Origin: Octopus sinensis
Lineage: Eukaryota
DNA: 58,390 nt
NCBI RefSeq assembly: GCF_006345805.1
Contig: NW_021833620.1
Span: forward strand, 1-58,390
Direction of reading: 5' to 3'
Shown here: positions 2,936-57,941 of the stretch, in pieces
Layout of the letters: the number at the start of each line of letters is the position of its first letter
How positions within the stretch are numbered: position 1 is the stretch's first letter
Notes under the pieces: model-generated
What the model was told of the DNA's origin: nothing
Seen by the model: the letters and a program-made list of their open reading frames with translations, nothing else
Database searches by the model: none
Program-made: the position numbers and the translations under genes

Positions 2936-3320
2936 TAATTGCTATAGCTGCTCTTAAAATTAAAAATACCGAAATCATTACCCAAAGAAATTTCTCAATA
3001 GAAACGTTGTAAAACAAGGAACAAACATAGCTTCGAAGTTTCTCCGAAACTAGCTTGTCGGTTGTAAGAAAAAATATCAAGAAAAAATGGTGAATCAAAA
3101 GAAAAAAGAAGAAAAATGATTTTTCTAAAACTTATTCCATGGAAGTTTTACGTGTTATGCATATGCAACCATATTTGTATGAATATATTCTTCCATTCAA
3201 AATGACGCTGTCTACTTGCGTTAAATGAACTTATTAATGAGTTTGCATCCAATCTGGTACTCGAATATGTTTTCACCTAAGCATTGGTAACATGTTTCTT
3301 GCAATTTACGTAAGGGCTTT

Positions 3321-3888
3321 AAGGCGGCGAGCTGGCAGAAACGTCAGCACGCCGGGCGAAATGCGTAGCCGTATTTCGTCCGCCGTTACGTTCTGAGTTC
3401 AAATTCCGTCGAGGTCGACTTTGCCTTTCATCCTTCCGGGGTCGATTAAATAAGTACCAGTTACGCACTGCAGTCGATGTAATCGACTTAATCCGTTTGT
3501 CTGTCCTTGTTTGCCCCCTCTGTGTTTAGCCCCTTGTGGGCAGTAAAGAAATAGGTATTTCGTCTGCCGCTACGTTCCGAGTTCAAATTCCGCCGAGGTT
3601 GACTTTGCCTTTGATCCTTTTGGGGTCGATAAATTAAGTACCAGTTACGCACTGGAGTCGATGTAATCGACTTAATCCGTTTGTCTGTCCTTGTTTGTCC
3701 TCTCCGTGTTTAGGCCCTTGTGGGTAGTAAAGAAACAGGTATTTTGTCTGCTGTTACGTTCCGAGGTCGACTTCGCCTTTCATCCTTTCGGCATCGATAA
3801 ATTAAGTACCAGTTGCGTACTGGGGCCGATCTAATAGACTGGACCCCTCCCCCAAAATGTTGAGCTTCGTGCTCAGAGTATAAAGAAA
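3321..3888 (+). mobile_element. tRNA-headed SINE type B (Deu/Nin-like central domain), internally trimeric
   Basis: A-box-like GAGCTGGCAGAA, B-box GAGTTCAAATTCC, then GTCGACTTTGCCTTTCATCC..GGGGTCGATAAATTAAGTACCAG repeated three times at ~180 bp spacing. Confidence 0.85.
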
Positions 3889-4304: not shown

Positions 4305-4727
4305 CAGCACAGTGGCTGTGTGGTAAGCATTTTGCCTACCAACCACATGGTTCTGGTTCAGTCCCACTGCATGGCATCTTGGGCAAGTGTCTTCTGCTAA
4401 AGCCTCGGGCCGACCAATGCCTTGTGAGTGGATTTGTGGTAGACGGAAACTGAAAGAAGCCTGTCGTATATATGTATATAATTGTATTTATGTGTATGTA
4501 TATGTTTGTGTGTCTGTGTTTGTCCCTCTAGCATTGCTTGACACCAACCGATGCTGGTGTGTTTCCGTCCCCGTCACTTAGCGGTTCGGCACAAAGAGAA
4601 CCGATAGAATAAGTACTGGGCTTACAAGGAATAAGTCCCGGGGTCGATTTGCTCGACTAAAGGCGGTGCTCCAGCATGCCGCAGTCAAATGACTGAAACA
4701 AGTAAAAGAGTAAAAGAGTAAAGAGTA
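4305..4727 (+). mobile_element. tRNA-headed SINE type A (CORE-like), full length, internal TA/TG microsatellite, (AAAAGAGT)n tail
   Basis: Head TGGCTGTGTGGTAAG...GGTTCAGTCCC, CORE-like GGCATCTTGGGCAAGTGTCTTCT, tail GACTGAAACAAGTAAAAGAGTAAAAGAG; about 13 further copies in the window. Confidence 0.85.
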
Positions 4728-4831
4728 TATGGAGGTGTAAGAATTCTCGTACGAAGATCGCAGTGTCGTGAAACTCCAGTCACAAACTTTACGACTAACA
4801 GTCATAACTCTGCTTAGAATTCTGTCTCTCT

Positions 4832-8782: not shown

Positions 8783-10387
8783 AAAATGTACAAGTGATAT
8801 TTTCATGATGTAGACCTATTACCTACGATTGTAAGGTGATGAAAATTCGGTATTGTCAATTGATTACAAACAGTGATCATATAGCATATTTTTGGCATAT
8901 CGACTCTGAAGAGATGACAGCAGAATTTGACCCATCTCACATTTGAACCCAGACTGGTAAGTCGCCAAAGTGATTATTCTAAACCAATTTAAACTAAGTT
9001 GTCTCCCCCCACTCACGTTCAAGTTTTTCCCTCTCTCCCACCTGCTCCACCTTAACTAAATTTTAAGACGATAATTACTCCACTGAAATGGAATTTAGCA
9101 TTTGACATTCATCTGTCATTTTGAGCAATTACCTCGGCCAAAATTAATTAGTAATTAATTGTAAATTTTTTTTTTTAATTAAAAATTATTTAACCAAATT
9201 ATGTTGTCTGAAATAACAAGTTTAAATGTTTATCTTTAATAAGCAATAACTATGAAAGGGCATTGAAATTAAAATTCATTTTAATTTACATAGACGCCAT
9301 AAAAATCGTATTTGATATTGCATAAACATTACAATATACCAATAAATCTGTTTATCACAATAAGCCTAAAATGTCAAAGCCAACTAACAAACCTCTGCAT
9401 AGATGCTCGACCTGCTAAAAATAGCAGCAAAAATCTTAGTCGAATCAGAGCCCATTATCTTAAATAGGGAACGAACGTATTAGAAAATATAGTCTTAAAT
9501 CTACCTTTAGAAAGATAGGATTGTGACGATTAGAAATATTTTGAAGGTATGTCTGCAGGTGGAGGGCTTCCCTCCGTCTAAACATCAGCGTAATGACACT
9601 AAATGAAATGGCCCAAGTTGGTCCCCAGCGATGTCATTCTTTTTTTCTTAATAACCGTTTCATTATTGCTGTTGCTGTTGTTGATGATGGTGTTGATGTT
9701 TCAGCTCTTGTTTTGGTTGTTATTGCTGTTGTTTTCGTGGTTGCATATTTTGTCGTTGTCGCTATTATTGTTGCTGCTGTTATTCACGCAGGCACTTTCC
9801 CTCTCCCCGCCACCACCACCGCTGCTGCTGCTGCTGTTGTTGTTGTAGTTGTTGTTTGTTTTATCGGCAGTCGGTCAAACAAAAGTGATCATTGAACGTT
9901 TGTCTACGCTATCTGACACAGATATCTCTCTGCGTGAAAGGCACCGGTTTACGTACGACAATTCGCACGAAATAGTTTCGCATTCTTTTCTTGTTGGAAA
10001 ACGATAATATATGCAGCAACAAGAAAACTAAAAAAAAATAATAATAAAAAAGAATAACAGCATCAATACAAACAACACCAAGAACAGCAATAAAAATGTA
10101 TCTTTCAACCAATCAACAAAAGAACACATTAACAATGGACAATATAACACTGTAATATGAACATGTTCTTTGTTTTCACATGTAACCAAATGCACGGTAA
10201 AATCTATGCTTTGTATGCATGTTATGTAGGTGTGTTATGTTTGTATATGTGTCTCTATATACGCATGCATATATATGGGTAGATGTATTTGTATGTAGTA
10301 CGATCTGTACTCGTCTAACTCTAAATTCTGAAGCGTATTTATTTAGAGTTCTAACAACAGGATATTAGTATTGCTATGGCTAAGCGA

Positions 10388-10428
<41 letters not shown>

Positions 10429-10688
10429 GTATGTATATAACATTAAATTTAGGGTAAAAATTGATATTTATCAATTAGAACTAGTGGTCTAGCATATTAA
10501 AGAAAGAATCCGAAGATTAAAATATTTATATATACCAATTAAGGACTGAACACGAAAAAGTGGACAGTCAACATGCTAGAAATAGACGTCAAATCGTCAT
10601 TCTCCACAAAAAGTCTATGTTCTCAGATCAAACTCAACACAAAACCAAAACAATAAACAAGTGAAAAATATACGAAATAAATATTTAC

Positions 10689-10754
10689 CCATGTAATAAA
10701 TTCAGTTTCGGCTGTTATTTTCCGCAAGGAAAAGTGCAGCCATCATCAGCATGG
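10689..10754 (-). ncRNA. Type I hammerhead ribozyme (antisense arm)
   Basis: The minus strand reads CCATG-CTGATGA-T-GGCTG...CAGCC-GAAACTGAATTTATTA-CATGG, with one substitution (G to T) in stem III. Confidence 0.7.
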
Positions 10755-10789
10755 TCCATATAATTACAGCAAATTACATTTTATAGGGA

Positions 10790-10857
10790 CCATGCTGATG
10801 ATGTGGCTGCACTTTTCCTTGCGGAAAATAACAGCCGAAACTGAATTTAGTACATGG
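10790..10857 (+). ncRNA. Type I hammerhead ribozyme (sense arm)
   Basis: CCATG-CTGATGA-(TGT)-GGCTG[cacttttcc ttgc ggaaaataa]CAGCC-GAA-ACTGA(AT)TTAGT-A-CATGG: stems I, II and III all pair, GUA cleavage triplet ending at 10852; 2 extra nt after the core relative to the other arm. Confidence 0.75.
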
Positions 10858-11045
10858 GTAAATATTTATTTCGTATATTTTTCACTTGTTTATTGTTTTG
10901 GTTTTGGTTGAGTTTGATCTGAGAACATAGACTTTTTGTGGAGAGAATGACGTTTGACGTCTATTTCTAGCATGTTGACTGTCCACTTTTTCGTTGTTCA
11001 GTCCTTAATTGGTATATTAATTAGTATATATATATATAATATATA

Positions 11046-11299: not shown

Positions 11300-11860
11300 C
11301 AAAGGTGTCAGGTAATGCTGAATAAGTGCTATAGACAGACCATAGTTAAGTTCCAGATTCGGTAATGTTGCAAATAAAGGGTTCAACGTTGGTTCTATGT
11401 TAGCATGTGTATTTATGAATTTTTTGCGTAATGAGATAAAAAAAAACCAAGGCTGTATAGATATTAGAGCATTTATAGGTAGAAGGTTTTACAGCTGATT
11501 CTAGGATAGTGTGAGAGGAAAAATTAAGTCATAATTAGTTTCGTTGTGATACAAATAGAGAGTGAGGTGGAGGAAAGAAAATAGATGTAAGGTTAATATA
11601 TGTATGGTTATTGAATTCGTAAATCCGTCTTATAGGTATAATGATATATATGTGAAATATTCCAATATCCTTTGAGTAAAATCCAAAAGTTCGACAGTGT
11701 TTAATATGAGTCAATCCAGATATAGAGTTTATAAGCAATGTAAGATTCTCTTAAAGTTGGTCATTCCCAGTAGGGAATTTATATAGTGTGTAGCAGATCC
11801 AAGGTTTGTATTTACTACTACAAACCAATTATGGGCGAAAAGGTCAAACTTACAATATAG
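11300..11860 (-). mobile_element. Possible ancient Penelope-like RT remnant
   Basis: Minus-strand fragment FYLITQKIHK..EPFICNI.SGT resembles the PLE motif FYLLPKIHK...RPIIS; heavily decayed. Confidence 0.3.
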
Positions 11861-11882
11861 CATTATACTTATCATTTGTAGA

Positions 11883-12109
11883 TACTCTTTTACTCTTTTA
11901 CTTGTTTCAGTCATTTGACTACGGCCATGCTGGAGCACCGCCTTTAGTCGAGCAAATCGACCCCAGGACTTATTCTTTGTAAGCCCAGTACTTATTCTAT
12001 CGCTCTCTTTTGCAGAAACGCTAGGTGACGGCGACGTAAACACACCAGCATCGGTTGTCAAGCAATGCTAGGGGAACAAACACAGACACACAAACATAAA
12101 CACACACGC

Positions 12110-12142
<33 letters not shown>

Positions 12143-12251
12143 CACGACGGGCTTCTTTCAGTTTCCATCTACGAAAATTCACTCACAATTCTTTGGTCGA
12201 CCCGAGGCTATAGTAGAAGACACTTGACCAAAGTGCCACGCAATGGGACTA
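11883..12251 (-). mobile_element. SINE type A, head truncated by the adjacent Penelope fragment
   Basis: tactcttttactcttttacttgtttcagtcatttgact tail through gaagacacttgaccaaagtgccacgc. Confidence 0.85.
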
Positions 12252-12254
12252 AAA

Positions 12255-12722
12255 TGTGAGCACATTGAGAAATGCGCAAAGCAACTACTACCACATTTTT
12301 TAATCTTTCCATTTTACCAATGTGCTATCGGATCATAAACACAAATTAGACTAAACAAGGAAGCATTCTTCATTGAAAAGTACAAGCCCAGACTTAACCA
12401 TCCCAACATACTGATACAGAGAAATTCACACCAAGGGAAACGAAAAAAAAATTTAAGCGATTATCTCCCTTACACCGGAAGAAATCACTCATTACCTCCC
12501 CTTATTTAGAACTCTTTTGAACATAAACATGACGATAACTCTATTCAACATAAACATAACGTCGTAAGAAATTTGAAAAGCTAAATGCGAAACCGGTCTT
12601 TCTTCAAAATTATGTCATTATAAGAGAAAAATTTTTTTTAATATTCTTCAGACATATTGACGCAAATATATATTTTTTAACATTTAAGCCTTCTGTAGTT
12701 TTTTCACTTTTCACTATTTTCT
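12255..12722 (+). mobile_element. Penelope-like element 3' fragment (end of GIY-YIG region + 3' UTR), same family as 22580-26312
   Basis: Aligns by eye with 25822-26312 (gtgagcaca..gcgcaaagcaactact...tttttaacatttaagcctt); ends in (TA)n. Confidence 0.85.
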
Positions 12723-13855
12723 ATATATGTATATATATATATATATATATAATATACATACTATATACATACATACCTATATATATATACATATATATGC
12801 GTGTAGATGAGGATAAACATACACGAATACACTTAAAAATGATATGTGTATGTATAAATAATGTTTATCACATTGCGCGTACGAACTTGTATGCAGTACA
12901 GATCTACATATGTTCACACTTAAATACCAACACGCTGGTGTACAACAGAGACTTGATGTTGTTTTAGGGTCTGCACCTGCGTCTACAACTGCATTCAGAT
13001 GTATACACTGTATACACACACGCATAGATAAATACACATCGATATATACATGCATACATACATACATACGTACATACATGCATGCATACATATATATATA
13101 TGTATATATTCATATACATATGCATATATATATGTACAAATGCATATATATATATGTATATACATACATTATATATATATATATTATATATATATATATA
13201 TATATACATGCATTTATATATGTATGTATATATATGTATACGTATATAAATATGTGTGTTTCTCTATATATATTTGTATATATATATGTATATATACATG
13301 CATATAAATATATATGTACACATATATATGAAGACACACGCAGACACACATATGTATATATGTATGTACAGTACATGCGTACATTTACACACCGAGGTAT
13401 ACGTATGAGATTTATATACACGCGCACACACATATTTAGTTCTTTTTTCTATATTGCTACACATGTGAAATAAAATAGCTGTGTCTTGTGTGTGTGTGTG
13501 TGTAGGTGTGTGTGTGTGTGTGTGCGTGTGTATGTGCGTGTTTGTGTGTACTTCTGTGTGTGTGTAGGTGTGTTTGTGTTGTGTGTGTTTGTACAAGAAC
13601 CCGTACACTGACCCAATGTGTACATCGATGCAGCTTTCGTACGTACACATCATATTCTCATCCAAGCGCCTGTTCACACGTACACAACTCGTACCTCAAA
13701 TGGTTACACATACACAAAGACCCAGATAGAGCGAAAGGAAGAGAAAGAGGGAGAAAAAAACAGAGGTGGGAGAATGCTGCAAATACATACATACACTCTC
13801 AGTCATACACACACATATTTGTATATATATGTATATATGAATATATATGTATATA

Positions 13856-14539: not shown

Positions 14540-15372
14540 TTCTACTAAAAGCACAAGGCCTAACATTTTGCGTTAGGGGACGAGTTGATTTCATGGACCC
14601 CAGTGTTTCACTGGTACTTAATTTATCGACCCCGAAAGAATCAAAGGCAAAGTTGACCTCAGCGGAATTTGAACTCGGAACGTAAAGACAGACAAAATAC
14701 CACTAAGCATTTGCTCGGCATGCTAACATTTCTTATTTTTTTATTGCCCACAAGGGGCTAAACACAGAGAGGACAAAAAAGGTCAGACAAAGGGATTAAG
14801 TCGATTACATCAACCCCAGTGTTTCACTGGTACTTAATTTATCGACCCCGAAAGGATGAAAGGCAAAGTAGATCTCGGTGAAATTTGAGCACAGAACGTA
14901 AAGCGAGATGAATTGCCGCTAAGTATTTTTCTCGGCGTGCTAACGATTCTTATTTCTTTATTGCCCTCAAGGGGCTAAACATAGAGGGGACAAACAATGA
15001 TAGACAAAGGGATTAAGTCGATTACATCGAGCACTGTGCGTAACTGGTACTTATTTAATCGACCCCGATTGGATGAAAGGCAAAGTCGACCTCGGCAGAA
15101 TCTGAACTCAGAACGTAGCGGCAGACGAAATACCTATTTCTATTTCTTTACTGCCCACAAGGAGCTAAACACAGAGAGGACAAACAAGGACAGACAAACG
15201 GATTAAGTCGATTATATCGACCCTAGTGAGTAACTGGTACTTATTTAATTGACCCCGAAAGGATGAAAGGCAAAGTCGACCTCGGCGGAATTTGAACTCA
15301 GAACGTAACGGCAAACGAAATACCGCTAAGCATTTCGCCCGGCGTGCAAACGTTTCTGCCAGCTCACCACTT
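14540..15372 (-). mobile_element. SINE type B tandem multimer (four ~180 bp units plus terminal part)
   Basis: gaccccgaaaggatgaaaggcaaagtcgacctcggc recurs near 14628, 14845, 15061 and 15251; one head (ctgccagctcacc) at 15356-15372. Confidence 0.9.
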
Positions 15373-17799: not shown

Positions 17800-18376
17800 A
17801 CGAATTACTGCTTGCTCGTGAAATTCACGTGCAAATCGCTAAAAACTACACAAAGACGCGTACCTGTAGCGTAATTGTCATGGAGATTCAGCGGGACACA
17901 AAATGTGACAAAGCTGACCCTTTGAATTACAGGTACTACTCGTTTTTTTTTTGCCAGTTGAATGGACTGGAGCATCAGGAAATTAAGTGTCTTGGCTAAA
18001 CACAGAGAGGACAAACAACGACAGACAAACGGATTAAGTCGATTACATCGACCCCAGTGCGTAACTGGTACTTAATTTATTGACCCCGAAAGGATGAAAG
18101 GCAAAGTCGACCTCGGCGGAATTTGAACTCAGAACGTAGCGGCAGACGAAATACCAATTTCTTTAATACCCACAAGGGGCTAAACATAGAGGGGACAAAC
18201 AAGGACAGACAAAGGGATTAGGTCGATTATATCGACCTCAGTGCGTAACTGGTACTTAATTTATCGACCACGATAAAGTCTACCTTGGCAGAATTTGAAC
18301 TCATAACGTAACGGCGGACGAAATACCGCTGCGCATTTCGCCCGGCGTGCTAACGATTCTGCCAGCTCGCCGCCTT
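17800..18376 (-). mobile_element. SINE type B dimer (17995-18376) joined to or inserted in a D/C chimeric SINE body (17800-17995)
   Basis: Two B units, then gccaagacacttaatttcctgatgctccagtccattcaactgg (D body) and gtacctgtaattcaaaggg..gtcacatt (C tail) on the minus strand. Confidence 0.75.
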
Positions 18377-18533
18377 ATCATGAGCGAAATATCGTAACCA
18401 CTAAGTCATGCGCTTTAACACAACCATCTCCATTAAATCCACCGTCAAATACAACCATCGTTTCCCACCCACACAAAAACACATGATGGACAGCTCTTGA
18501 AGGTTCTTTATTCTCTTATATAAGTATTATGTA

Positions 18534-21440: not shown

Positions 21441-22340
21441 TATTTCCAGATAACAAACCGCTTGAAAGAAACAAAATTAGAGATAAAAAATGACAAAATA
21501 TTTGAGATACCGTCAGAATTTTAGGCAGAATCTGGTTGACAAATGGTCTTTAAATATGGCGGTAGTGGTGTTGGTGGTGATGGTGGTGGATGCGGTGGAG
21601 ATGGTAGTGGTGGTTTTGATGGTGGTGGTGGTGGTGAAGAGAAAAGTTTCAGCTAGAGTAAGGGATATGTAACAGCTCAGTTCAGGAGAGGAAACTCCGT
21701 TAAAGGGGAAACAGGAGATGAAAAATCCCAAAAAATTTTTGTTAATAACAAAAAGTCCACAGGAATATGAAGACTTGTAGTTTAGTGGTTGCAGCATATT
21801 GGTAAGTAAATCATTCCAAGCAGTCAAAAATGGTCTTCTTTTGTGGTTAAATAAACAAATGAACAGAACGATAAACGTTCGATTGACGGATCGATAAGTG
21901 CGGTTGTATAAGTATCTACTTTACGATCAAGTTCATACACACACATACGTACATACATACATACATACATACATACATACATACATAAATACATATATAT
22001 ACACGCATATATATATATATATAATATATATATATATAATATATATATATATATGCGTGTATATAAGTGCATATGTATATATATACATCTATTTGTATAT
22101 ATTGTATACAAACACACACACATATATACATATATTTGTTCCATCCGCCCTCGTGTTGTTTTTTTTTGTGCTTTCTTTTTTGGATTAACTTTATATATAT
22201 ATATATATAAATACACACACACATGTATATGCATATATATACATATATATATGCATATATATACATATATTACATACGTATAATATTATGTGTGGTGCCT
22301 ATATATATATATATAGATATAGATATACATATATAATATA

Positions 22341-22373
<33 letters not shown>

Positions 22374-22414
22374 CATGCATATATTACAGACACCAAACAG
22401 CTCTATAGTGTATA

Positions 22415-22450
<36 letters not shown>

Positions 22451-22579
22451 CACACACACATATATATGCATATATATACATATATACATACATATAATAT
22501 TATGTGTGGGTGCATATATATATATATAGATATAGATATACATATATATATATTATATATATAATATATATACTATATA

Positions 22580-24469
22580 TATAAGAAAATAGTAAAGTGG
22601 TGAAAAAACGACAGAAGGCTTAAATGTTAAAAAATAATATATTTGTGTCAAAATGTCTGGAGAACTGGAAAATTTTTTTCCTTTCCTTAAAATGACATAA
22701 TTTTAAAATTTTTAAAGAAATTAACCGGTTTCGCGTGTAGCTTTTCAAATTTCTTGTGACGTTATGTTTATATTGTATGGAATTATCGTTGTTTTTATTT
22801 CCAGGAGATTTCTAAATAAGGGGAGGTATGAGTGATTTTTTCCGGTGTAGGGGAGATAATCGCTTAAAAAATTTTTTTCCCATTTCCTTGTTATTTCTCG
22901 TGTGTCAGTATGTTCGGATGGTTGAGTCTGGGTTTGTACTTTTCAATGAAGAATGTTTTCCTTGTTCAGTCTCATTTGTGTTGATGATCCGAAAGCACAT
23001 TGGTAAAATGGGAAGATTAAAAATTGTGGCAGTAGTTGCTTTGCGCATTTCTCGATGTGCTCACTAAAAGGTATCATTCTATATTCTGGGAATGCAATCT
23101 GTTGTCGATGCAGTGTGCACTGCGCCTGAGTGATAGTCCCGTGGAACCCACGTAGTCTTGGTGGCAGCCCGAGCATTTAATAACATAATTATTTTTCAGA
23201 GGCACAAGTAAAGTTGATTTTGATCTTAAATTTCTGTCCCTCTTTAAAGAAGAATTTGATCCTTCCAATAGGTTAGGACATGTTGCACAGTTTCGATCTA
23301 CCACATTTTTAACTTTGCATCCGTAATTTTAGAAGACAATTTTGCCTTTGTGAGAATCTTTAAGTGATTTAGGCTGTTTGTAGCTTTTAATGATTGGTGT
23401 ATGTTTAGAATTTCCTTTAATTTTGGGTTTTTATGAAGTATTGGTAATTCTGGGTGATGATGGTGAAGGCTTCTTTGTTTCTTCTGGGTTGTATGTAGAT
23501 ATGTAAGGTAGTATTTTCGGGGAAGGTGTGTTGTTGTGTTGAACTTTTCTTAAAGTTTCTATGTTGATTTCTGGTTGCACGTCTGATCCCATCCTCTATG
23601 AGTTGAGCTGGTAATGTCTGTCAATTAGGGTGTTTTTGAGTTCTTGCAGTCTAAAGTTCCTGGTATTTTGTTCTGACACTATTGTGCATATCCTTCTTGC
23701 AAGGTTGAAGGGGATGTTTGTTTTAGTGTGTCTTGGGTGGCATGAATTAAAAAGAAGGTATTGTTTGGCGTCTGTGGCTTTGTAAAAAATGTCTGTTTCT
23801 ATTTTATTAAGGTTAATTTTTTTTATTAGTATATCCAAGAACGGGAGCTCCTTTTGGTTGTATTCCATTGTGAACTGTATATTTGGGTTTATGCTGTTCA
23901 ATAGGTTTTTAAATTTTAGGAGTTTATCTATGTTTTCATTCCAGAGAATGAAACAATCGTCTAGGAATCGTTTCCAATTCTCTTTTATGTATTGAGAGAG
24001 GGAGTTTCCAAAGATTGATAGAGATTCCTGGTAAATGATTATTTCCATGTATCCCATTGTTAAGTTCGCAATGACTGGTGCTGCCCTTGTACCCATAGCA
24101 ATTCCGGATTTTTGACGGTAAAATGTATTGTCAAACATGAAGTGGTTATTGTGTAGGATGAATTCAATTGATTTAGTATGAATTCCTTACTGATCCTTTT
24201 TGGTATTTCTTCCGGAAATTGGTCTAACCAGAATTGTATTGCCTCCAGTCCATAATTATGAGGTATACTGGTATACAAGTTGACTACAATCAAATGAAAC
24301 CAGGATTGTTTCTTCCTTGGTTTTTTTTGGAAGGTGTTTTAACATATCTAAGTCATCTCTGATATGGCTATCGATATTTTAAGGAAGGGTTTCAAGAGGA
24401 TGTCCATAAGTAGACTTAGTCTGGTGTTTCACAGGTTGGGCCAGCTACAATGGGTCGTAGTTTTAGGTC
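22580..24469 (-). mobile_element. Penelope-like retroelement (Neptune-like), 5'-truncated, left arm of palindrome: RT core to GIY-YIG to 3' UTR
   Basis: Minus strand KLRPIVAGPTCET, MIVVNLYTSIPH, FYRQKSGIAMGTRAAPVIANLTM, WKRFLDDCFILW, LPFLDI, YLLFNSCHPRHTK, CGRSNCATC linker, YVIKCSGCHQDYVGSTG; frameshifted. Confidence 0.95.
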
Positions 24470-26312
24470 GGCCCAACCTGTGAAACACACAGACTAAGTC
24501 TACTTATGGACACCTCTTTGAAACCCTTCCTTAACATATCGATAGCCATATCAGAGATGACTTAGATATGTTAACCACCTTCCAAAAAAAACCAAGGAAG
24601 AAGACAATCCTGGTTTCATTTGATGTAGTCAACTTGTATACCAGTATACCTCATAATTATGGACTGGAGGCATACAATTCTGGTTAGACCAATTCCGGAG
24701 AAATACCAAAAAGGATCAGTAAGGAATTCATTACTAAATCAATTGAATTCATCCTACACAATAACCACTTCATGTTTGACAATACATTTTAACGTCAAAA
24801 ATCCGGAATTGCTATGGGTACAAGGGCAGCACCAGTCATTGCGAACTTAACATGGATACATGGAAATAATCATTTACCAGGAATCTCTATCAATCTTTGG
24901 AAACTCCCTCTCTCATACATAAAAGAGAATTGGAAACGATTCCTAGACGATTGTTTCATTCTCTGGAATGAAAACATAGATAAACTCCTAAAATTAAAAA
25001 CCTATTGAACAGCATAACCCAAATATACAGTTCACAATGGAATACAACCAAAAGGAGCTCCCGTTCTTGGATATACTAATTAAAAAATAACCTTAAAATA
25101 GAAACAGACATTTTTTACAAAGCCACAGACGCCAAACAATACCTTCTTTTAATTCATGCCACCCAAGACACACTAAAACAAACATCCCCTTCAACCTTGC
25201 AAGAAGGATATGCACAATAGTGTCAGAACAAATACCAGGAACTTTAGACTGCAAGAACTCAAAACACCCTAATTGACACATTACCCAGCTCAACTCATAG
25301 AGGATGGGATCAGACGTGCAACAGAAATCAACATAGAAACTTTAAGAAAAGTTCAACACAACAACACACCTTCCCCGAAAAAATACCTTACATATCTACA
25401 TACAACCCCAGAAACAAAGAAGCCTTCACCATCATCACCCAGAATTTACCAATACTTCATAAAACCCAAAATTAAAGGAAATTCTAAACATACACCAAAT
25501 CATTAAAAGCTACAAACAGCCTAAATCACTTAAAAAGATTCTCACAAAGGCAAAATTGTCTTCTAAAATTACGGATGCAAAAGTTAAAAAATGTGGTAGA
25601 TCGAACTGTGCAACATGCCTAACCTATTGGAAGGATCAGAATTCTTCTTTAAAGAGGGACGAAATTTAAGATCAAATCTAACTTTACTTGTGCCTCTGAA
25701 AACATAATTTATGTTATAAATGCTCGGGCTGCCACCAAGACTACGTGGGTTCCACGGGACTATCACTCAGCGCAGATGCACACTGCATCGACAACAGATT
25801 GCATTCCCAGAATATAGAATGATACCTTTTAGTGAGCACATCGAGAATGCGCAAAGCAACTACTGCCACAATTTTTAATCTTCCCATTTTACCAATGTGC
25901 TTTCGGATCATCAACACAATGAGACTGAACAAGAAACATTCTTCATTGAAAAGTACAAACCCAGACTCAACATCCGAACATACTGACACAGAGAAATTAA
26001 CAAGGAAATGGGAAAAAAATTTTTTAAGCGATTATCTCCCCTACACCGAAAAAATCACTCACTACCTCCCCTTATTTAGAAATCTCCTGGAAATAAAACA
26101 ACGATATTCCATACAATATAAACATAACGTCACAAGAATTTGAAAGCTACACGCGAAACCGGTAATTTCTTTAAAAATTTTAAATTATGTCATTTTCGGA
26201 AAGGAAAAAAATTTTTCCAATATTCTCCAGACATTTTGACACAAATATATATATTTTTTTAACATTTAAGCCTTCCCGTGTCGTTTTTTCACACTTTACT
26301 ATTTTCTTATAT
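24470..26312 (+). mobile_element. Penelope-like retroelement, right arm of palindrome (inverted copy of the left arm)
   Basis: Begins at ggcccaacctgtgaaac, the reverse complement of 24426-24442; same RT/GIY-YIG motifs (MGTRAAPVIANL, WKRFLDDCFILW) with many 1-nt indels. Confidence 0.95.
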
Positions 26313-26329
26313 ATTCACCACGTGCTTTA

Positions 26330-26358
26330 CCAAACAAACTTTCTTATCTATTATATAT

Positions 26359-26391
<33 letters not shown>

Positions 26392-26442
26392 CATACATGC
26401 ATATATTACAGACAACAAACAACTCTATATGTGTATATGTAC

Positions 26443-26477
<35 letters not shown>

Positions 26478-26902
26478 ATATATATATATATAGATATCTG
26501 AATATGAATATGTATATATAGTAGAGAGAGAGAACAAAGGTAGATATATCGATCGATAGACATCAATGCGCGCACACATACGCACACGCAGTCGAGCTAA
26601 CACACACAAAGATATATATTATATATACACATGTAAACATATATACACATGTAAATATATCAATATATAGAAATAAATATGCATATTTATACATATAGAA
26701 ATATATTTACATATGTGTGTATATCTCCATGTTTTTATACACCCATACATATATACATACACTCACAAACATATAATATATATATATGTAAATTTATTTT
26801 TATTTATTAATATATATCTATATCTATTATATTCTACATTCGTATACATTTCTGTATATATTTCCGTGTGTTCGTGTGAATACGTATATGCCACCATATA
26901 TT

Positions 26903-26952
<50 letters not shown>

Positions 26953-26966
26953 TCATTATTTATATA

Positions 26967-27016
<50 letters not shown>

Positions 27017-27096
27017 TTATTATTATTATTATTATTATTATTATCATATTTTATTATTATTTTTATTATTATTATCATCATCATCATTATTATTAC

Positions 27097-27145
<49 letters not shown>

Positions 27146-27173
27146 GTTATCATTATTCTTATTATCATTATTC

Positions 27174-27233
<60 letters not shown>

Positions 27234-27320
27234 CTGTACGTATATCACCACATATACGTACACATATACAAAAGCATAATATATATATTATAGATATATA
27301 TATATATATATACACAACAC
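26330..27320. repeat. TA-rich field including a long (TAT)n array (~26900-27230)
   Basis: Direct reading. Confidence 0.95.
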
Positions 27321-37640: not shown

Positions 37641-37879
37641 TTTCTTAGGGGCTTTCATGATTTTTCTCTTTTCAACGTTTTTTTCTTTCTCCAGATTCAG
37701 TCAGATCCGACACTGCCCCAGAATACATTTACTCAAAATGCAACTCTGCACATATTGAACTCGAAACCACGAAGTTGTAACCAAAAGGACTTGTTAACTC
37801 AAGAAACCTACCAACAGAACATCAATGCAGCATGTTGCTCCAACTTATCACAATAGTCATGGAGTAACATCTTTGCCGT

Positions 37880-38049
37880 CACTACCACCATCATTGTCAT
37901 CATCGTCATCATCGTCATCATCAGCATCATCATCATCATCATCATCATCCTCATCGTGATCATCATCATCATCATCATCGTCGTCGTCGTCATCGTCGTC
38001 GTCGTCATCGTCATCGTCGTCATCGTAATCGTCATCGTCATCGTCATCG

Positions 38050-38087
<38 letters not shown>

Positions 38088-38124
38088 GTCATCGTCATCA
38101 TCATCGTCATCATCATCGTCATCG

Positions 38125-38162
<38 letters not shown>

Positions 38163-38294
38163 ATCATCGTCGTCGTCATCATCATCATCATCATTGTCAT
38201 CGTCATCATCATCGTCATCATCATCATCATCGTCATCGTCATCGTCGTCATCATCTTCATCATCGTCATCATCGCCATCGTCATCATCACATCG

Positions 38295-38325
<31 letters not shown>

Positions 38326-38430
38326 CTTACTGTCATCACTGACTAATTTTACCATCACAATCCTCACCACCACCACCATCCACAACAACAACAACAACAC
38401 CCTCATCGTCATTATCATCATTATCATTAG
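37880..38430. repeat. Cryptic (CAT/CGT)n trinucleotide array
   Basis: Direct reading. Confidence 0.95.
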
Positions 38431-39904: not shown

Positions 39905-40545
39905 TGTTTAGCCCCTTGTGGGTAGCAAAGAATCGGTAGCACGCCGGGCGAAATGCGTAGCTGTATTTCATCTGTCTTCATGTTCTGAGTTCAAATTCCG
40001 CCGAGGTCGACTTTAATTTTCATCCTTTCCGGGTCAATAAATTAAGTACCAGTTACGCACTGGAGTCGATGTAATCGACTTAATCCGTTTGTCTGTCGTT
40101 GTTTGTCCTCTCTGTGTTTAGCCTCTTGTGGGTAGTAAAGAAATAGGTATTTCATCTGCCGTCACGTTCTGAGTTAAAATTGCGCCGAGGTCGACTTTGC
40201 CTTTCATCCTTTCAGGGTCGAAAAAATAAGTACCAGTTGCGTACTGCGGTTGATCTAATTGACTCGTCCCCTCCCCCAAAATTTCGGGCCTTGTACCTAG
40301 AGCAGAAATGAATAATACTGTGTAGGAAGGCGGCGAGGTGGCAGAAACGTTAGGACGCCGGGCAAAATGCTCAGCGGTATTACGTGTCTTTACGTTCTGA
40401 GTTCAAATTACGCCGAGATCTACTATGCCTTTCATCCTTTCAGGGTCGATAAATTAAATACCAGTTGCATACTGGGGTGGATGTAATCGACTGGTTCCCT
40501 CCCCCAAAAGTCGGGCCTTGTGCCTAGAGTGGAAAAGGATAATAC
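39905..40545 (+). mobile_element. SINE type B cluster: a multimer (39905-40310) followed by a monomer (40325-40545)
   Basis: Repeated B cores; new head aaggcggcgaggtggcagaaacg at 40327. Confidence 0.85.
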
Positions 40546-54062: not shown

Positions 54063-54682
54063 TATAGAAGTATTATCTGCTTAGGGAACTGTTCTTTCTT
54101 TGAGACGCCTTTTTCTTCCAGTAAAGATATTATTATTTTCCACACAAATGGCCGGACTTTCGTATATTGCTGACAGATCAATACAAGTATTTTCGGCAAA
54201 CAGGATATTGGTCTGTACTTTTCGGGAACCGGTTATATTTTTGTTTTGGGGGGAATGGATATTGTTTTTCTAGTCGAATAATTTATTGAATGCCGCAGTT
54301 ATAGGCTCAAGTTGTTGTTATTATTATTGTCGCTGTTGTTGTTGTTGTTGCTACTGCCTTTTTTATTGGTCAACCAAGGTCATCCCTGACTGAAGAAATC
54401 TATAACCAAAGGCATTCCGCTTTTGGCCATCCCGTCGCTTTAGGAGTGTGTGGGACAAAAGTGTCTGATACGTCCTTTATTAAAGATGTCAGGGTGTTAT
54501 TTAAAGATTTTGCTGTTATTTCTAGCAGTTTCAACGACTGCGTAGGCTCCTCAGCTTCGTGCACATGTATTATGTGACTTCACATAAAATGGTGAACCCT
54601 CTTATTTATGAATCCCCTCAATTCTGTTGAGAAATTACCAGTCTGTTATACTGGACCATGCCTGTAGTGACATCGTAAACTG

Positions 54683-54880
54683 TTTGTCCCCCTAGCATTG
54701 CTTGACAACCGATGCTGGCGTGTTTGCGTCCCCGTCACTTAGCGGTTCGGCAAAAGAGACCGATATAATAAGTACTAGGCTTACAAAGAATAAGTCCCGG
54801 GGTCGAGTTGCTCGATTAAAGGCGGTGCTCCAGCATGGCCGCAGTCAAATGACTGAAACAAATAAAAGAGTAAAAGAGTA
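54683..54880 (+). mobile_element. SINE type A 3' half
   Basis: tttgtccccctagcattgcttgacaaccgatgctgg...taaaagagtaaaagagta. Confidence 0.9.
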
Positions 54881-55287
54881 AACAGTTTGAAACTTCGGAT
54901 ACTGGTTGAATGTGTCACGTTGAACACGGTTTACTCTTAACGTTTTTGACAAAACTTTGTATTTTAGAATTATTTCGTGTTAAAGTCGTCGTATTTGGAT
55001 AATTTCAAACAATCAATGACACGTATTCAGCTGAAGAAAGTTGTTAGCGATAGTAATAGAAGAGCAACAACTTCCGGGTCATCGGGTCATGAAAGAGAGA
55101 GTGAGAGAGAGAGAGAGAGGAGAGAAGTGGGAGAAAAGTATAAAATTAAGGTGAGTGAGAAAAACAGAAATTTCTTTTATAGGGAATATAAGTGTGTGTA
55201 CGTTTGTATTTTTCCATCTTATCCAATGTTTCCTCCCGTTTATATCATATTAGTGTGTGACATTGAGAGAGATTTGGCTGTTATTTC

Positions 55288-55600: not shown

Positions 55601-55654
55601 CGCTTAACCTAAGAGTTCATGAAAGAGCTTTGTAGAGTATACAGCAACATATAA

Positions 55655-56062
55655 TACTCTTTTACTCTTTTACTCTTTTACTTGTTTCAGTCATTTGACT
55701 GCGGCCATGCTGGAGCACCGCCTTTCGTCGAGCCCCCGGGACTTATTCTTTGTAAGCCCAGTACTTATTCTATCGGTTTCTTTTGCCGACTCACTAAGTG
55801 ACGGGGACGTAAACACACCAGCATCACCTGTCAAGCAATGCTAGGGGGACAAACACAGACACACAAACACACATACACATATATACATATATATACATAT
55901 ATACGACAGGCTTCTTTAAGTTTCTGTCTACCAAATCCACTCACAAGGCATTGGTCGGCCCGGGGCTATAGCAGAATACACTTGCCCAAGATGCCACACA
56001 GTGGGACTGAACCCGGAACCATGTGGTTGGTTAGCAAGCTACTTACCACACAGCCACTCCTG
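55655..56062 (-). mobile_element. SINE type A, full length
   Basis: Tail to head motifs. Confidence 0.9.
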
Positions 56063-57530: not shown

Positions 57531-57541
57531 GATATACTCTT

Positions 57542-57941
57542 TTTACTAGTTTCAGTCATTTGACTGCGGCCATGCTGGAGCACCGACTTTAGTCGAGCAA
57601 ATCGACCCCGGGACTTATTCTTTTGTAAGCCCAGTACTTATTCTATCGGTCCCTTTTGCCGAACCGCTAAGTAACGGGGACGTAAACACACCAGCATCGG
57701 TTGTCAAGCAATGCTAGGGGGACAAACACAGATACACAAACATATGCACACACATACATATATATATATGCATATATACGACAGGCTTCTTTCAGTTTCC
57801 GTCTACCAAATACACTCACAAGGCATTGGTCGGCCCGAGGCTATAGCAGAAGACACTTGCCCAAGATGCCACGCAGTGGGACTGAACCCGGAACCATGTG
57901 GTTGGTTAGCAAGCTACTTACCACACAGCCACTCCTGCGCC
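57542..57941 (-). mobile_element. SINE type A, full length
   Basis: Tail to head motifs. Confidence 0.9.

What the first reader, a model, noticed from the sequence alone, without database searches (positions are those of the whole stretch)
22580..26312. 3.7 kb palindromic Penelope-like element: two 5'-truncated copies fused head-to-head through a 27-nt loop, both 3' ends in (TA)n
Seen: the arms (22580-24442, 24470-26312) mirror each other. The 27-nt spacer is extra PLE coding sequence (KLRPIVA) belonging to the minus copy. Seen: the host DNA is not mirrored. A ~240 bp TA-rich tandem unit (marker catgcatatattacagaca.caaaca at ~22375) is interrupted in its second copy and resumes in direct orientation at ~26395. 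Established: Penelope elements can carry inverted terminal repeats. Inference: a target-primed cDNA folded back on its own 3' end and was recopied almost completely, giving a two-tailed hairpin insertion. Arm differences are mostly 1-nt indels, which may be sequencing error rather than age.
Basis: partly seen in the sequence, partly recalled or inferred. Interest (0 to 1): 0.8.

Follow-up and report, generated by a model that had tools for sequence, protein, structure and literature searches.

The report
Head-to-head Penelope-like retrotransposon palindrome
Two truncated copies of a Penelope-like jumping gene sit back-to-back as a 3.7 kb mirror image inside a TA repeat of what looks like an octopus genome; the structure is there, but this inverted arrangement is already a well-described habit of these elements, so this is a tidy example and not a new kind of thing.

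Summary
Window 22577-26314 is a near-perfect palindrome: 1817 matches, 10 mismatches and 64 small indels. It consists of two 5'-truncated copies of one Penelope-like element (PLE) joined head-to-head: a minus-strand copy (22584-24469) and a plus-strand copy (24470-26307).

The 27-nt centre is real PLE coding sequence that continues the minus copy. Both outer ends are the element's true 3' terminus abutting (TA)n, and the host ~240-bp repeat unit resumes in direct orientation. [quoted passage not shown] No hammerhead ribozyme was found.

Differences between the arms are overwhelmingly 1-nt indels, mostly next to homopolymers, which fits long-read consensus error. Only 3 clean substitutions remain.

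The literature already describes 5'-truncated inverted copies, a one-sided 30-40 bp "tail" (one is present at 26315-26348), (TA)n targeting, and a self-priming explanation. Five of 11 related loci I sampled also carry head-to-head copies.

This locus is the symmetric extreme of that range. It mildly favours snap-back of the nascent cDNA over twin priming but cannot settle the question. An assembly artefact is unlikely but cannot be tested here. It is a new member of a known kind, of modest interest.

The parts
22527..22583 (.). Left target flank: the TA-rich part of the second copy of a ~240-bp host tandem unit. The last 4-7 bases (TATA) could be target or element.
   Evidence: Sequence; empty-site reconstruction against the neighbouring unit.
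22584..24469 (-). PLE copy A, the longer one. It is 5'-truncated just upstream of RT motif 1 (starts DLKLRPIVAGPTCET) and runs to the true 3' terminus ...CTATTTTCT. Its ORF remnant is about 22900-24469 and its 3' UTR about 22584-22899.
   Evidence: Arm alignment; homology to L001 begins exactly at 24469; tblastn of the stitched protein covers 24469-22900 across three frames.
23596..24138 (-). Longest intact ORF piece (180 aa): RT palm motifs including FLDD, plus thumb (HTH_animal region in homologues).
   Evidence: ORF list. 256 homologues at E<=1e-3, best 5.7e-72; the highest-identity named hits are Octopus sinensis and O. bimaculoides at 79-80% identity, with Pfam RVT_1 + PF26215 among the hits.
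23074..23304 (-). Linker Zn-finger-like CxxC and the GIY-YIG core of the endonuclease in copy A (…NCATCP…, YVIKCSGCHQDYVGST).
   Evidence: ORF translation. The stitched protein gives KKCGRSNCATC and a weak Pfam GIY-YIG hit (E=0.041) at residues 428-475. Homologues of the EN region carry PF01541.
24443..24469 (-). 27-nt centre (loop): the extra 5' sequence of copy A, with no filler DNA. 24443-24450 and 24461-24468 can pair at 6 of 8 positions, leaving a 10-nt loop.
   Evidence: Alignment to L001 9832-9858; pairing test p about 0.012 by shuffles, and 40 of 1816 real 27-mers reach it.
24470..26307 (+). PLE copy B, the mirror of copy A minus the 27 nt. It starts at GPTCET and ends at the same 3' terminus. 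Its ORF remnant is about 24470-25991, broken into all three frames.
26315..26348 (+). One-sided 34-nt extension (TCACCACGTGCTTTACCAAACAAACTTTCTTATC). It is not mirrored and is absent from the neighbouring host unit. It sits after 7 nt of TA and resembles the element's own last ~30 nt. It fits the published PLE 'tail' in length and in being one-sided.
   Evidence: Sequence. Similarity to the terminus scores 20 against 8.3 +/- 3.4 in shuffles, with 8 of 2000 reaching it. No match to L001's 5' region or elsewhere. Tail definition from PMC8557442 and PMC3846280.
26349..26414 (.). Right target flank: (TA)n, then the host unit resumes in direct orientation (marker at 26396).
12256..12728 (+). A separate, older 3' fragment of the same PLE family (84% identity to the arms) that also ends in (TA)n. 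It was used to define the element's 3' terminus.
   Evidence: blastn; three-way alignment.

Best explanation
One retrotransposition event of a Neptune/Nematis-type, endonuclease-bearing Penelope-like element into a (TA)n tract produced both arms.

Shown: both outer ends are bona fide element 3' termini next to (TA)n. The two copies meet 5'-to-5' with no host or filler DNA. The longer copy simply continues 27 nt further. The arms are essentially identical once indel noise is discounted.

Inferred: the GIY-YIG endonuclease nicked the + strand in (TA)n, and reverse transcription from that 3'-OH made the + strand of 22584-24469. About 1.9 kb into the RNA, just before RT motif 1, the nascent cDNA's 3' end snapped back on itself (possible 6/8 stem 24443-50/24461-68, 10-nt loop). 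The RT then copied its own cDNA back out to the element's 3' end and a few TA bases. That end was joined to the other side of the break in the self-complementary (TA)n, with a 34-nt tail left at that side only.

The insertion is dead on arrival: it lacks about 1 kb of 5' sequence, including the N-terminal domain.
For: Arm alignment: 1817/1827 identity at aligned bases, only 3 substitutions not adjacent to an indel, and 43 of 64 indels next to homopolymers.

The junction is sharp at 24469|24470, and the spacer is homologous to L001.

A common 3' terminus plus (TA)n occurs in three copies. Host DNA is not mirrored and the empty site can be rebuilt.

RT passes the Pfam cutoff; the linker and GIY-YIG motifs are present.

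The snap-back stem beats chance modestly, p about 0.01-0.02.

The loop here is 27 nt, against 344-2384 nt in the related head-to-head loci. Independent truncation points would coincide to within 27 nt in only about 2% of cases for a roughly 2.9 kb element (inference).

PMC3846280 infers self-priming from palindromes at inverted PLE junctions and notes that head-to-head is the commonest form. PMC8557442 describes inverted 5'-truncated copies, the one-sided 30-40 bp tail and (TA)n targets.
Against: Twin priming gives an identical end product, so the sequence alone cannot discriminate.

This locus was picked because it looks like a palindrome. Among many head-to-head PLE insertions some will be near-symmetric by chance, so ascertainment weakens the 2% argument.

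The related loci have large, unequal arms. In L004 the two copies differ by a 349-nt segment and are not simple mirrors unless a later deletion is assumed. L011 shows no junction microhomology.

The proposed stem has 2 mismatches and a bulged terminal C, in an assembly with about one indel error per 30-60 nt.

The tail is not explained by fold-back.

No read-level evidence exists that the palindrome is physically real.
Confidence: 0.45

Rival explanations
1. Twin target-primed reverse transcription. The endonuclease nicked both strands of the palindromic (TA)n target, and each 3'-OH primed its own cDNA from a PLE RNA. The two cDNAs stalled at nearly the same point and were joined, or the RT jumped from one RNA onto the other cDNA, giving a head-to-head pair.
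For: Both outer ends are true 3' termini in (TA)n, and (TA)n reads the same on both strands.

The related head-to-head loci have arms of very different lengths: 344, 901 and 2384 nt of unique sequence between arms. Independent cDNAs explain this most simply.

In L004 the two copies are not mirrors: one lacks a 349-nt segment and extends 400 nt further.

PMC8557442 attributes the tandem/inverted structures and the tail to the properties of the EN.
Against: It needs two independent cDNAs to stop within 27 nt of each other, about 2% a priori, unless this is a pause site. Imperfect complementarity at the ends of the spacer is not predicted by this model.
Confidence: 0.28
2. Post-insertion DNA-level palindrome. 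An ordinary single PLE insertion was later duplicated in inverted orientation by replication fold-back or template switching, with re-entry mediated by the self-complementary (TA)n flanks.
For: (TA)n flanks on both sides could mediate the second switch. The product would look the same. The window holds a second, unrelated palindrome also bounded by (TA)n (10527-11017).
Against: Head-to-head pairs are characteristic of PLEs in the literature (PMC3846280, PMC8557442) and occur in 5 of 11 sampled PLE loci, which points to the element's own machinery. Both outer boundaries coincide with the element's exact 3' terminus.
Confidence: 0.08
3. Assembly artefact. A fold-back or missed-adapter chimeric long read was built into a noisy long-read assembly, creating an inverted duplicate of a single real copy.
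For: The assembly is visibly indel-noisy: 64 indels against 10 mismatches between arms, and a similar pattern in the second palindrome. Clean assemblies show 4:17 and 2:12. PMC8557442 and PMC3846280 note that PLE repeats cause assembly trouble. No read data are available.
Against: A chimeric read would mirror the host flank too. Here mirroring stops within 3-7 TA bases of the element's end, a non-mirrored 34-nt tail follows, and the host unit then resumes in direct orientation. The structure lies mid-window, not at a contig end. The same architecture is seen in several independent, cleaner assemblies.
Confidence: 0.08
4. Two independent insertions of the same family in opposite orientations at the same (TA)n site, or copying of a pre-existing palindromic master transcript.
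For: The family targets (TA)n, and the window holds three copies, so repeated hits on one microsatellite are conceivable.
Against: There is no host DNA between the copies. The truncation points lie 27 nt apart. The arms differ by at most 0.4% substitutions, whereas the other copy in the window is 16% diverged. A 1.85-kb perfect hairpin RNA would be a poor RT template (inference).
Confidence: 0.04

Closest known systems
Head-to-head inverted-repeat insertions of EN+ Penelope-like elements (Evgen'ev & Arkhipova 2005; Arkhipova 2006; Arkhipova et al. 2013, PMC3846280; Craig et al. 2021, PMC8557442)
   Same: 5' truncation; an inverted 5'-truncated copy joined 5'-to-5'; a palindromic junction; a 30-40 bp tail at one end only; insertion into (TA)n with no discernible target-site duplication; and a self-priming explanation already proposed.
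   Different: The published typical form is a full-length or longer copy with pLTRs plus a shorter inverted copy. Here both copies are truncated at almost the same point, so the whole insertion is a 3.7 kb near-perfect palindrome with a 27-nt loop and no functional copy. In the five related head-to-head loci sampled, 344-2384 nt separate the arms.
Neptune / Nematis clades of C-terminal EN+ PLEs
   Same: [quoted passage not shown]
   Different: No hammerhead ribozyme motif was detected in the 3' region of the arms or in L001. No phylogeny with reference sequences was possible, so Neptune versus Nematis is unresolved.
LINE-1 twin priming / 5' inversion (Ostertag & Kazazian 2001; from my own knowledge, not checked here)
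   Same: A second priming event or template switch during target-primed reverse transcription produces an inverted segment within a 5'-truncated insertion.
   Different: L1 twin priming inverts a segment without duplicating it, so the two parts are different regions of the RNA. Here the same 1.85 kb is present twice, and both outer ends are 3' termini.
Snap-back (hairpin) second-strand synthesis by reverse transcriptases in vitro (classical cDNA cloning; from my own knowledge, not checked here)
   Same: The 3' end of a first-strand cDNA folds back and primes a copy of itself, leaving a short loop.
   Different: That is known as a test-tube property of retroviral RTs. Here it is only inferred for a PLE RT in vivo, from one genomic product.

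Membership tests
Penelope-like elements (EN+) | Reverse transcriptase domain of the PLE/TERT-related type | tested here: met
   The stitched 525-aa translation hits Pfam RVT_1 at 31.4 bits (cutoff 29.6). The 180-aa ORF has 256 homologues, many with RVT_1 + PF26215 (HTH_animal), and GIY-YIG on neighbouring genes. PLE-specific RT phylogeny was not done.
Penelope-like elements (EN+) | GIY-YIG endonuclease fused to the RT (C-terminal in canonical clades) | tested here: met
   The motif YVIKCSGCHQDYVGST lies downstream of the RT on the same strand. The Pfam GIY-YIG hit is weak (E=0.041, below cutoff) but at the right place. Homologues of the EN region carry PF01541.
Penelope-like elements (EN+) | Insertion architecture: 5' truncation, tandem or inverted copies (pLTR-type repeats), optional 30-40 bp one-sided tail | tested here: met
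   Both copies are 5'-truncated and joined head-to-head. A 34-nt one-sided extension lies at 26315-26348. There is no direct pLTR because no full-length copy is present.
Penelope-like elements (EN+) | Hammerhead ribozyme motif in the pLTR or 3' region (typical of canonical clades; absent in Naiad/Chlamys) | tested here: not met
   No Rfam hammerhead hit at E<=10 in 22300-26600 or in L001 8000-12500, and none at E<=0.5 in the whole window. No CTGANGA...GAAA core lies inside the arms. Indel noise could hide it in the window, but L001 comes from a separate public genome assembly (GCA_006345805.1).
Neptune/Nematis-type PLE | CX2-5CxxC Zn-finger-like linker between RT and EN | tested here: met
   KKCGRSNCATC in the stitched protein and KCGRPNCETC in L001. 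The feature definition is from PMC8557442.
Neptune/Nematis-type PLE | CCHH motif with two Cys between GIY and YIG | tested here: inconclusive
   The two cysteines are present (C-SG-C between YVIK and YVGST). Histidines occur downstream (LHRQQI, SEHIEKC), but they were not assigned against a reference alignment.
Hydra clade PLE | No CCHH in the EN; CxCX5C linker; DKT instead of DKG | tested here: not met
   Cysteines are present inside the GIY-YIG core and the linker is CX4CxxC. The longer relative L001 has DKG (IKEADKGSAVVV). The DKG region itself lies upstream of the truncation in the window.
cDNA snap-back (self-primed) product | Arms equal except for a short loop that continues one arm; complementarity at the base of the loop | tested here: inconclusive
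   The loop is 27 nt and continues the minus copy. The 6/8 pairing gives p about 0.012-0.022. Twin priming predicts the same sequence.
Long-read chimera / assembly artefact | Flanking host sequence mirrored together with the insert; no read spanning both flanks | tested here: not met
   Host flanks are in direct orientation, and the marker's reverse complement is absent. Read support cannot be tested with these tools.

The most novel reading that the evidence does not exclude
This locus is a preserved intermediate-like product showing that a PLE reverse transcriptase can snap back on its own nascent cDNA in vivo and recopy it completely. That would make self-templated fold-back the general origin of the inverted repeats that define the PLE class. 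If transcribed, such dead-on-arrival palindromes would also yield long hairpin RNA that could feed small-RNA silencing of the family.
Probability: 0.3. Interest if true: 0.5.

Novelty: new member of a known kind. Interest (0 to 1): 0.3.

Why it matters
How PLEs generate their direct and inverted repeats and their tails is still unresolved, and the literature calls for experiments. A fully symmetric insertion with a 27-nt loop, intact 3' termini on both sides and a rebuildable empty site is about the cleanest natural product one could ask for to frame the snap-back versus twin-priming question.

It also suggests a simple genome-wide test: the distribution of loop sizes in head-to-head pairs.

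In practical terms, long perfect palindromes in TA microsatellites are fragile and hard to assemble. Annotators of cephalopod genomes should expect them and should not read the frameshifts here as age.

It does not reveal a new kind of element or mechanism.

Tried and rejected
Hammerhead ribozymes. Rfam found none at gathering threshold or at permissive thresholds. A core-motif scan found none inside the arms. The 12 core matches elsewhere (2.6 expected) have no covariance-model support.

Hydra clade, suggested by the (TA)n targeting. [quoted passage not shown]

Origin of the 34-nt tail. No significant match to L001's 5' region, L001's 3' end, the arms' interior or the rest of the window. The only resemblance is to the element's own terminus.

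Exact-sequence look-up of the window's 180-aa ORF in public assemblies, tried in the hope of finding the source or a second assembly of the locus. It is not on record.

Search for the missing PLE 5' part elsewhere in the window. No hit.

Pfam on the individual broken ORFs gave only a sub-threshold RT hit; stitching was needed.

The three-way consensus still contained frameshifts, so the protein used is a hand-stitched join of frames and is approximate.

The miRNA-family hits around the flanks are TA-hairpin noise far below gathering scores.
Full report
OBSERVATION

The repeat finder returns a collinear series of inverted-repeat blocks between 22637 and 26248. A gapped alignment of the left arm against the reverse complement of the right arm gives 22577-24450 versus 24461-26314: 1817 matches, 10 mismatches and 64 indel events (56 of 1 nt, 6 of 2 nt, 2 of 3 nt). 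Chance is not an issue for 1.8 kb at over 99% identity at aligned bases.

By comparison with a third copy in the window, the unambiguous element ends are 22584 and 26307 (AGAAAATAG / CTATTTTCT). The next few bases are TA and could be element or target.

Host DNA is not mirrored. The marker CATGCATATATTACAGACA occurs at 22374 and 26396, both on the + strand, and its reverse complement is absent. Left flank plus right flank align to the neighbouring ~240-bp host unit.

WHAT IT IS

The left arm carries, on the minus strand, a 180-aa ORF (23596-24138) with reverse-transcriptase motifs. Further 3' on the same strand lies an ORF with a CxxC and the GIY...YIG core YVIKCSGCHQDYVGST.

The 180-aa ORF has 256 homologues. 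The highest-identity named ones come from Octopus sinensis and O. bimaculoides (79-80%) and Argonauta hians, and many carry Pfam RVT_1 and PF26215 (HTH_animal). The window is therefore most likely cephalopod, probably octopod, DNA; I could not identify the species.

A translation stitched across frames from both arms, guided by an 82%-identical O. sinensis copy (L001), passes the Pfam RVT_1 cutoff (31.4 against 29.6 bits). It gives a weak GIY-YIG hit at the expected place (E = 0.041). Homologues of the linker+EN region carry PF01541.

The order RT, then linker KKCGRSNCATC (CX4CxxC), then C-terminal GIY-YIG with two cysteines inside the core matches the Neptune/Nematis type. It does not match Hydra, the clade best known for (TA)n targeting, which lacks those cysteines and has DKT. 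L001 has DKG (definitions from PMC8557442).

No hammerhead ribozyme was found in the arms, in L001 or anywhere in the window. This differs from typical canonical PLEs.

ANATOMY OF THE INSERTION

The sense strand of the left copy, read through the centre, aligns to L001 starting exactly at window 24469. The 27 nt at 24443-24469 correspond to L001 9832-9858 (DLKFQPIIA in L001, DLKLRPIVA here), which lie immediately upstream of where the right copy begins (GPTCET).

So copy A is 22584-24469 (minus strand) and copy B is 24470-26307 (plus strand). The junction is sharp, with no filler, and both copies lack roughly the first 1 kb of the element. No 5' part is found elsewhere in the window.

Both outer ends, and the end of a third, 84%-identical 3' fragment at 12256-12728, share the terminus ...CACTATTTTC(T) followed directly by (TA)n.

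On the right side only, after 7 nt of TA, there is a 34-nt segment (26315-26348). It is neither mirrored nor present in the neighbouring host unit. It resembles the element's own last ~30 nt (score 20 against 8.3 +/- 3.4 in shuffles; 8 of 2000 reach it) and matches nothing else I could search.

In length and one-sidedness it fits the published PLE "tail". Its origin stays open: a degenerate terminal duplication, a transduced flank of the source copy, or a remnant of an older insertion.

ARE THE ARM DIFFERENCES AGE OR ERROR?

Indels outnumber mismatches 64 to 10, and 43 of the 64 are next to a homopolymer of the same base. Five of the 8 mismatches inside the arms proper touch an indel. The 3 clean ones (23824, 24118, 24378) are all transversions.

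In cleaner assemblies, comparable PLE inverted pairs show the opposite ratio: 17 mismatches to 4 gap positions (L004) and 12 to 2 (L006). A second, unrelated palindrome in this window also differs between its arms mostly by 1-2-nt indels.

The simplest reading is long-read consensus error of roughly 1-2% per strand. On that reading the arms are essentially identical: either very young or homogenised by gene conversion. The many frameshifts in both copies therefore say nothing about age.

HOW IT MOST LIKELY AROSE

What is shown: two copies of one sequence, both ending in the true 3' terminus at a (TA)n target, joined 5'-to-5' without intervening DNA, one 27 nt longer.

This is what results if a target-primed cDNA (the + strand of copy A, primed from a nick at about 22583) stopped after about 1.9 kb, folded back and was recopied to its start. 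The new end would then be captured by the self-complementary (TA)n on the other side of the break.

The ends of the 27-nt spacer can pair at 6 of 8 positions, leaving a 10-nt loop. That is a modest signal (p about 0.012 by shuffling; 40 of 1816 real 27-mers do as well), and it is not robust in a noisy assembly.

The main rival is twin priming on both nicked strands followed by joining, which gives exactly the same final sequence. It needs two cDNAs to stop within 27 nt of each other, about 2% a priori. However, this locus was selected for looking palindromic, so that argument is weakened.

The related loci also show large, unequal arms, which independent cDNAs explain easily. In L004 the two copies are not simple mirrors.

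My estimates: snap-back about 0.45; twin priming about 0.28; later DNA-level fold-back duplication mediated by the (TA)n flanks about 0.08; assembly artefact about 0.08; other origins about 0.04.

The artefact reading is disfavoured for three reasons. Mirroring stops within a few TA bases of the element's end. A non-mirrored tail and the direct continuation of the host unit follow. The same architecture recurs in independent assemblies. Read-level proof is not available here, and the window's ORF is not indexed in the public collection.

COMPARISON WITH WHAT IS KNOWN

Craig et al. 2021 (PMC8557442) describe PLE insertions as follows:
- highly 5'-truncated;
- often with an inverted 5'-truncated copy adjacent, forming inverted repeats;
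- with a 30-40 bp tail at one end only;
- with (TA)n as a preferred target for several clades;
- difficult to assemble.

Arkhipova et al. 2013 (PMC3846280) state that inverted-repeat structures with palindromes at the junction are abundant and that head-to-head is the most frequent form. They say this is best interpreted as self-priming, while leaving the template open.

PLEs are catalogued in octopus genomes; a curated Octopus vulgaris repeat annotation lists 31 Penelope-like families (PMC13282606).

I sampled 11 loci encoding related RTs from several assemblies. Five carry an inverted PLE copy head-to-head:
- L004: 1386-nt arms at 98.5%, 901 nt between them.
- L006: 1254-nt arms at 98.9%, 2384 nt between them.
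- L011: 1496-nt arms at 95.9%, 344 nt between them.
- L008 and L009: shorter inverted segments.

The sample is small and not random, but it shows that the arrangement is common in this group. The present locus is the symmetric extreme: both copies are truncated at almost the same point and no functional copy is present.

VERDICT

The fold-back mechanism is reasonable and already published, but it remains unproven for this instance. The locus is a new member of a known kind. Its value is as a clean example and as a prompt for a loop-size census that could separate snap-back from twin priming. Interest is about 0.3.

Noticed in passing
window 10441-11020 (arms 10527-10763 and 10781-11017): A second, unrelated palindrome: ~237-nt arms with a 17-nt spacer. 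(TA)n directly abuts the right end (from about 11024). An 86-nt unmirrored stretch (10441-10526) separates the left end from another (TA)n (10387-10440). The arms differ mainly by 1-2-nt indels. There is no similarity to the PLE and no other copy in the window or fetched loci. It could be a hairpin MITE with a TA target, or another fold-back retro-insertion with a one-sided extension.
   Followed up: partly
window 12256-12728 (+): A third copy of the same PLE family: only the last ~490 nt, 84% identical to the arms, ending in the same terminus plus (TA)n. It lies immediately downstream of a SINE-like dispersed repeat (11883-12250).
   Followed up: partly
window 8527, 10719, 10795, 30845, 33197, 34312, 41762, 46814, 52823, 54519, 57325: The hammerhead-core pattern CTGANGA-N7-30-GAAA occurs 12 times against 2.6 expected (0 of 100 shuffles reach 12). 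No Rfam hammerhead model scores at E<=0.5 anywhere in the window. Two of the matches are simply the two arms of the 10.5-11.0 kb palindrome. The rest are unexplained and are probably composition or repeat effects.
   Followed up: partly
window 4311-4728, 11883-12250, 54681-54882, 55654-56058, 57535-57933; also 3320-3840, 14951-15365, 17994-18377, 39929-40264: Two dispersed repeat families of about 200-420 bp (85-93% identity, both orientations), probably SINE-like elements. Here mismatches outnumber gaps, as expected for real divergence.
   Followed up: no
whole window: The window has 36% GC, is dominated by microsatellites (TA, TACA, CA, trinucleotide arrays such as 26836-27296 and 37800-38340), and has no convincing host gene. 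The indel-rich differences between repeat copies suggest an under-polished long-read assembly, so frameshifts anywhere in it should not be over-interpreted.
   Followed up: partly
L004 9487-10390 (ENA ERZ25072999 ctg320243): In this independent head-to-head PLE pair, one copy lacks a 349-nt segment. The deletion's 5' breakpoint (RT residues q6/q7, in KLRPK|VAGP) lies about 9 nt from the position homologous to this window's junction (IVA|GPT). The inner ends of the shorter copies in L006, L009 and L011 cluster at residues 75-91 of the stitched protein. There may be preferred stop or turnaround sites near RT motif 1, or this may be coincidence.
   Followed up: no
L008 5013-9579 versus 11591-11930: Several diverged copies of the ~230-345-nt 3'-end segment of a related PLE lie in inverted orientation upstream of the coding copy. 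This resembles arrays of solo pLTR-like or non-autonomous units.
   Followed up: no
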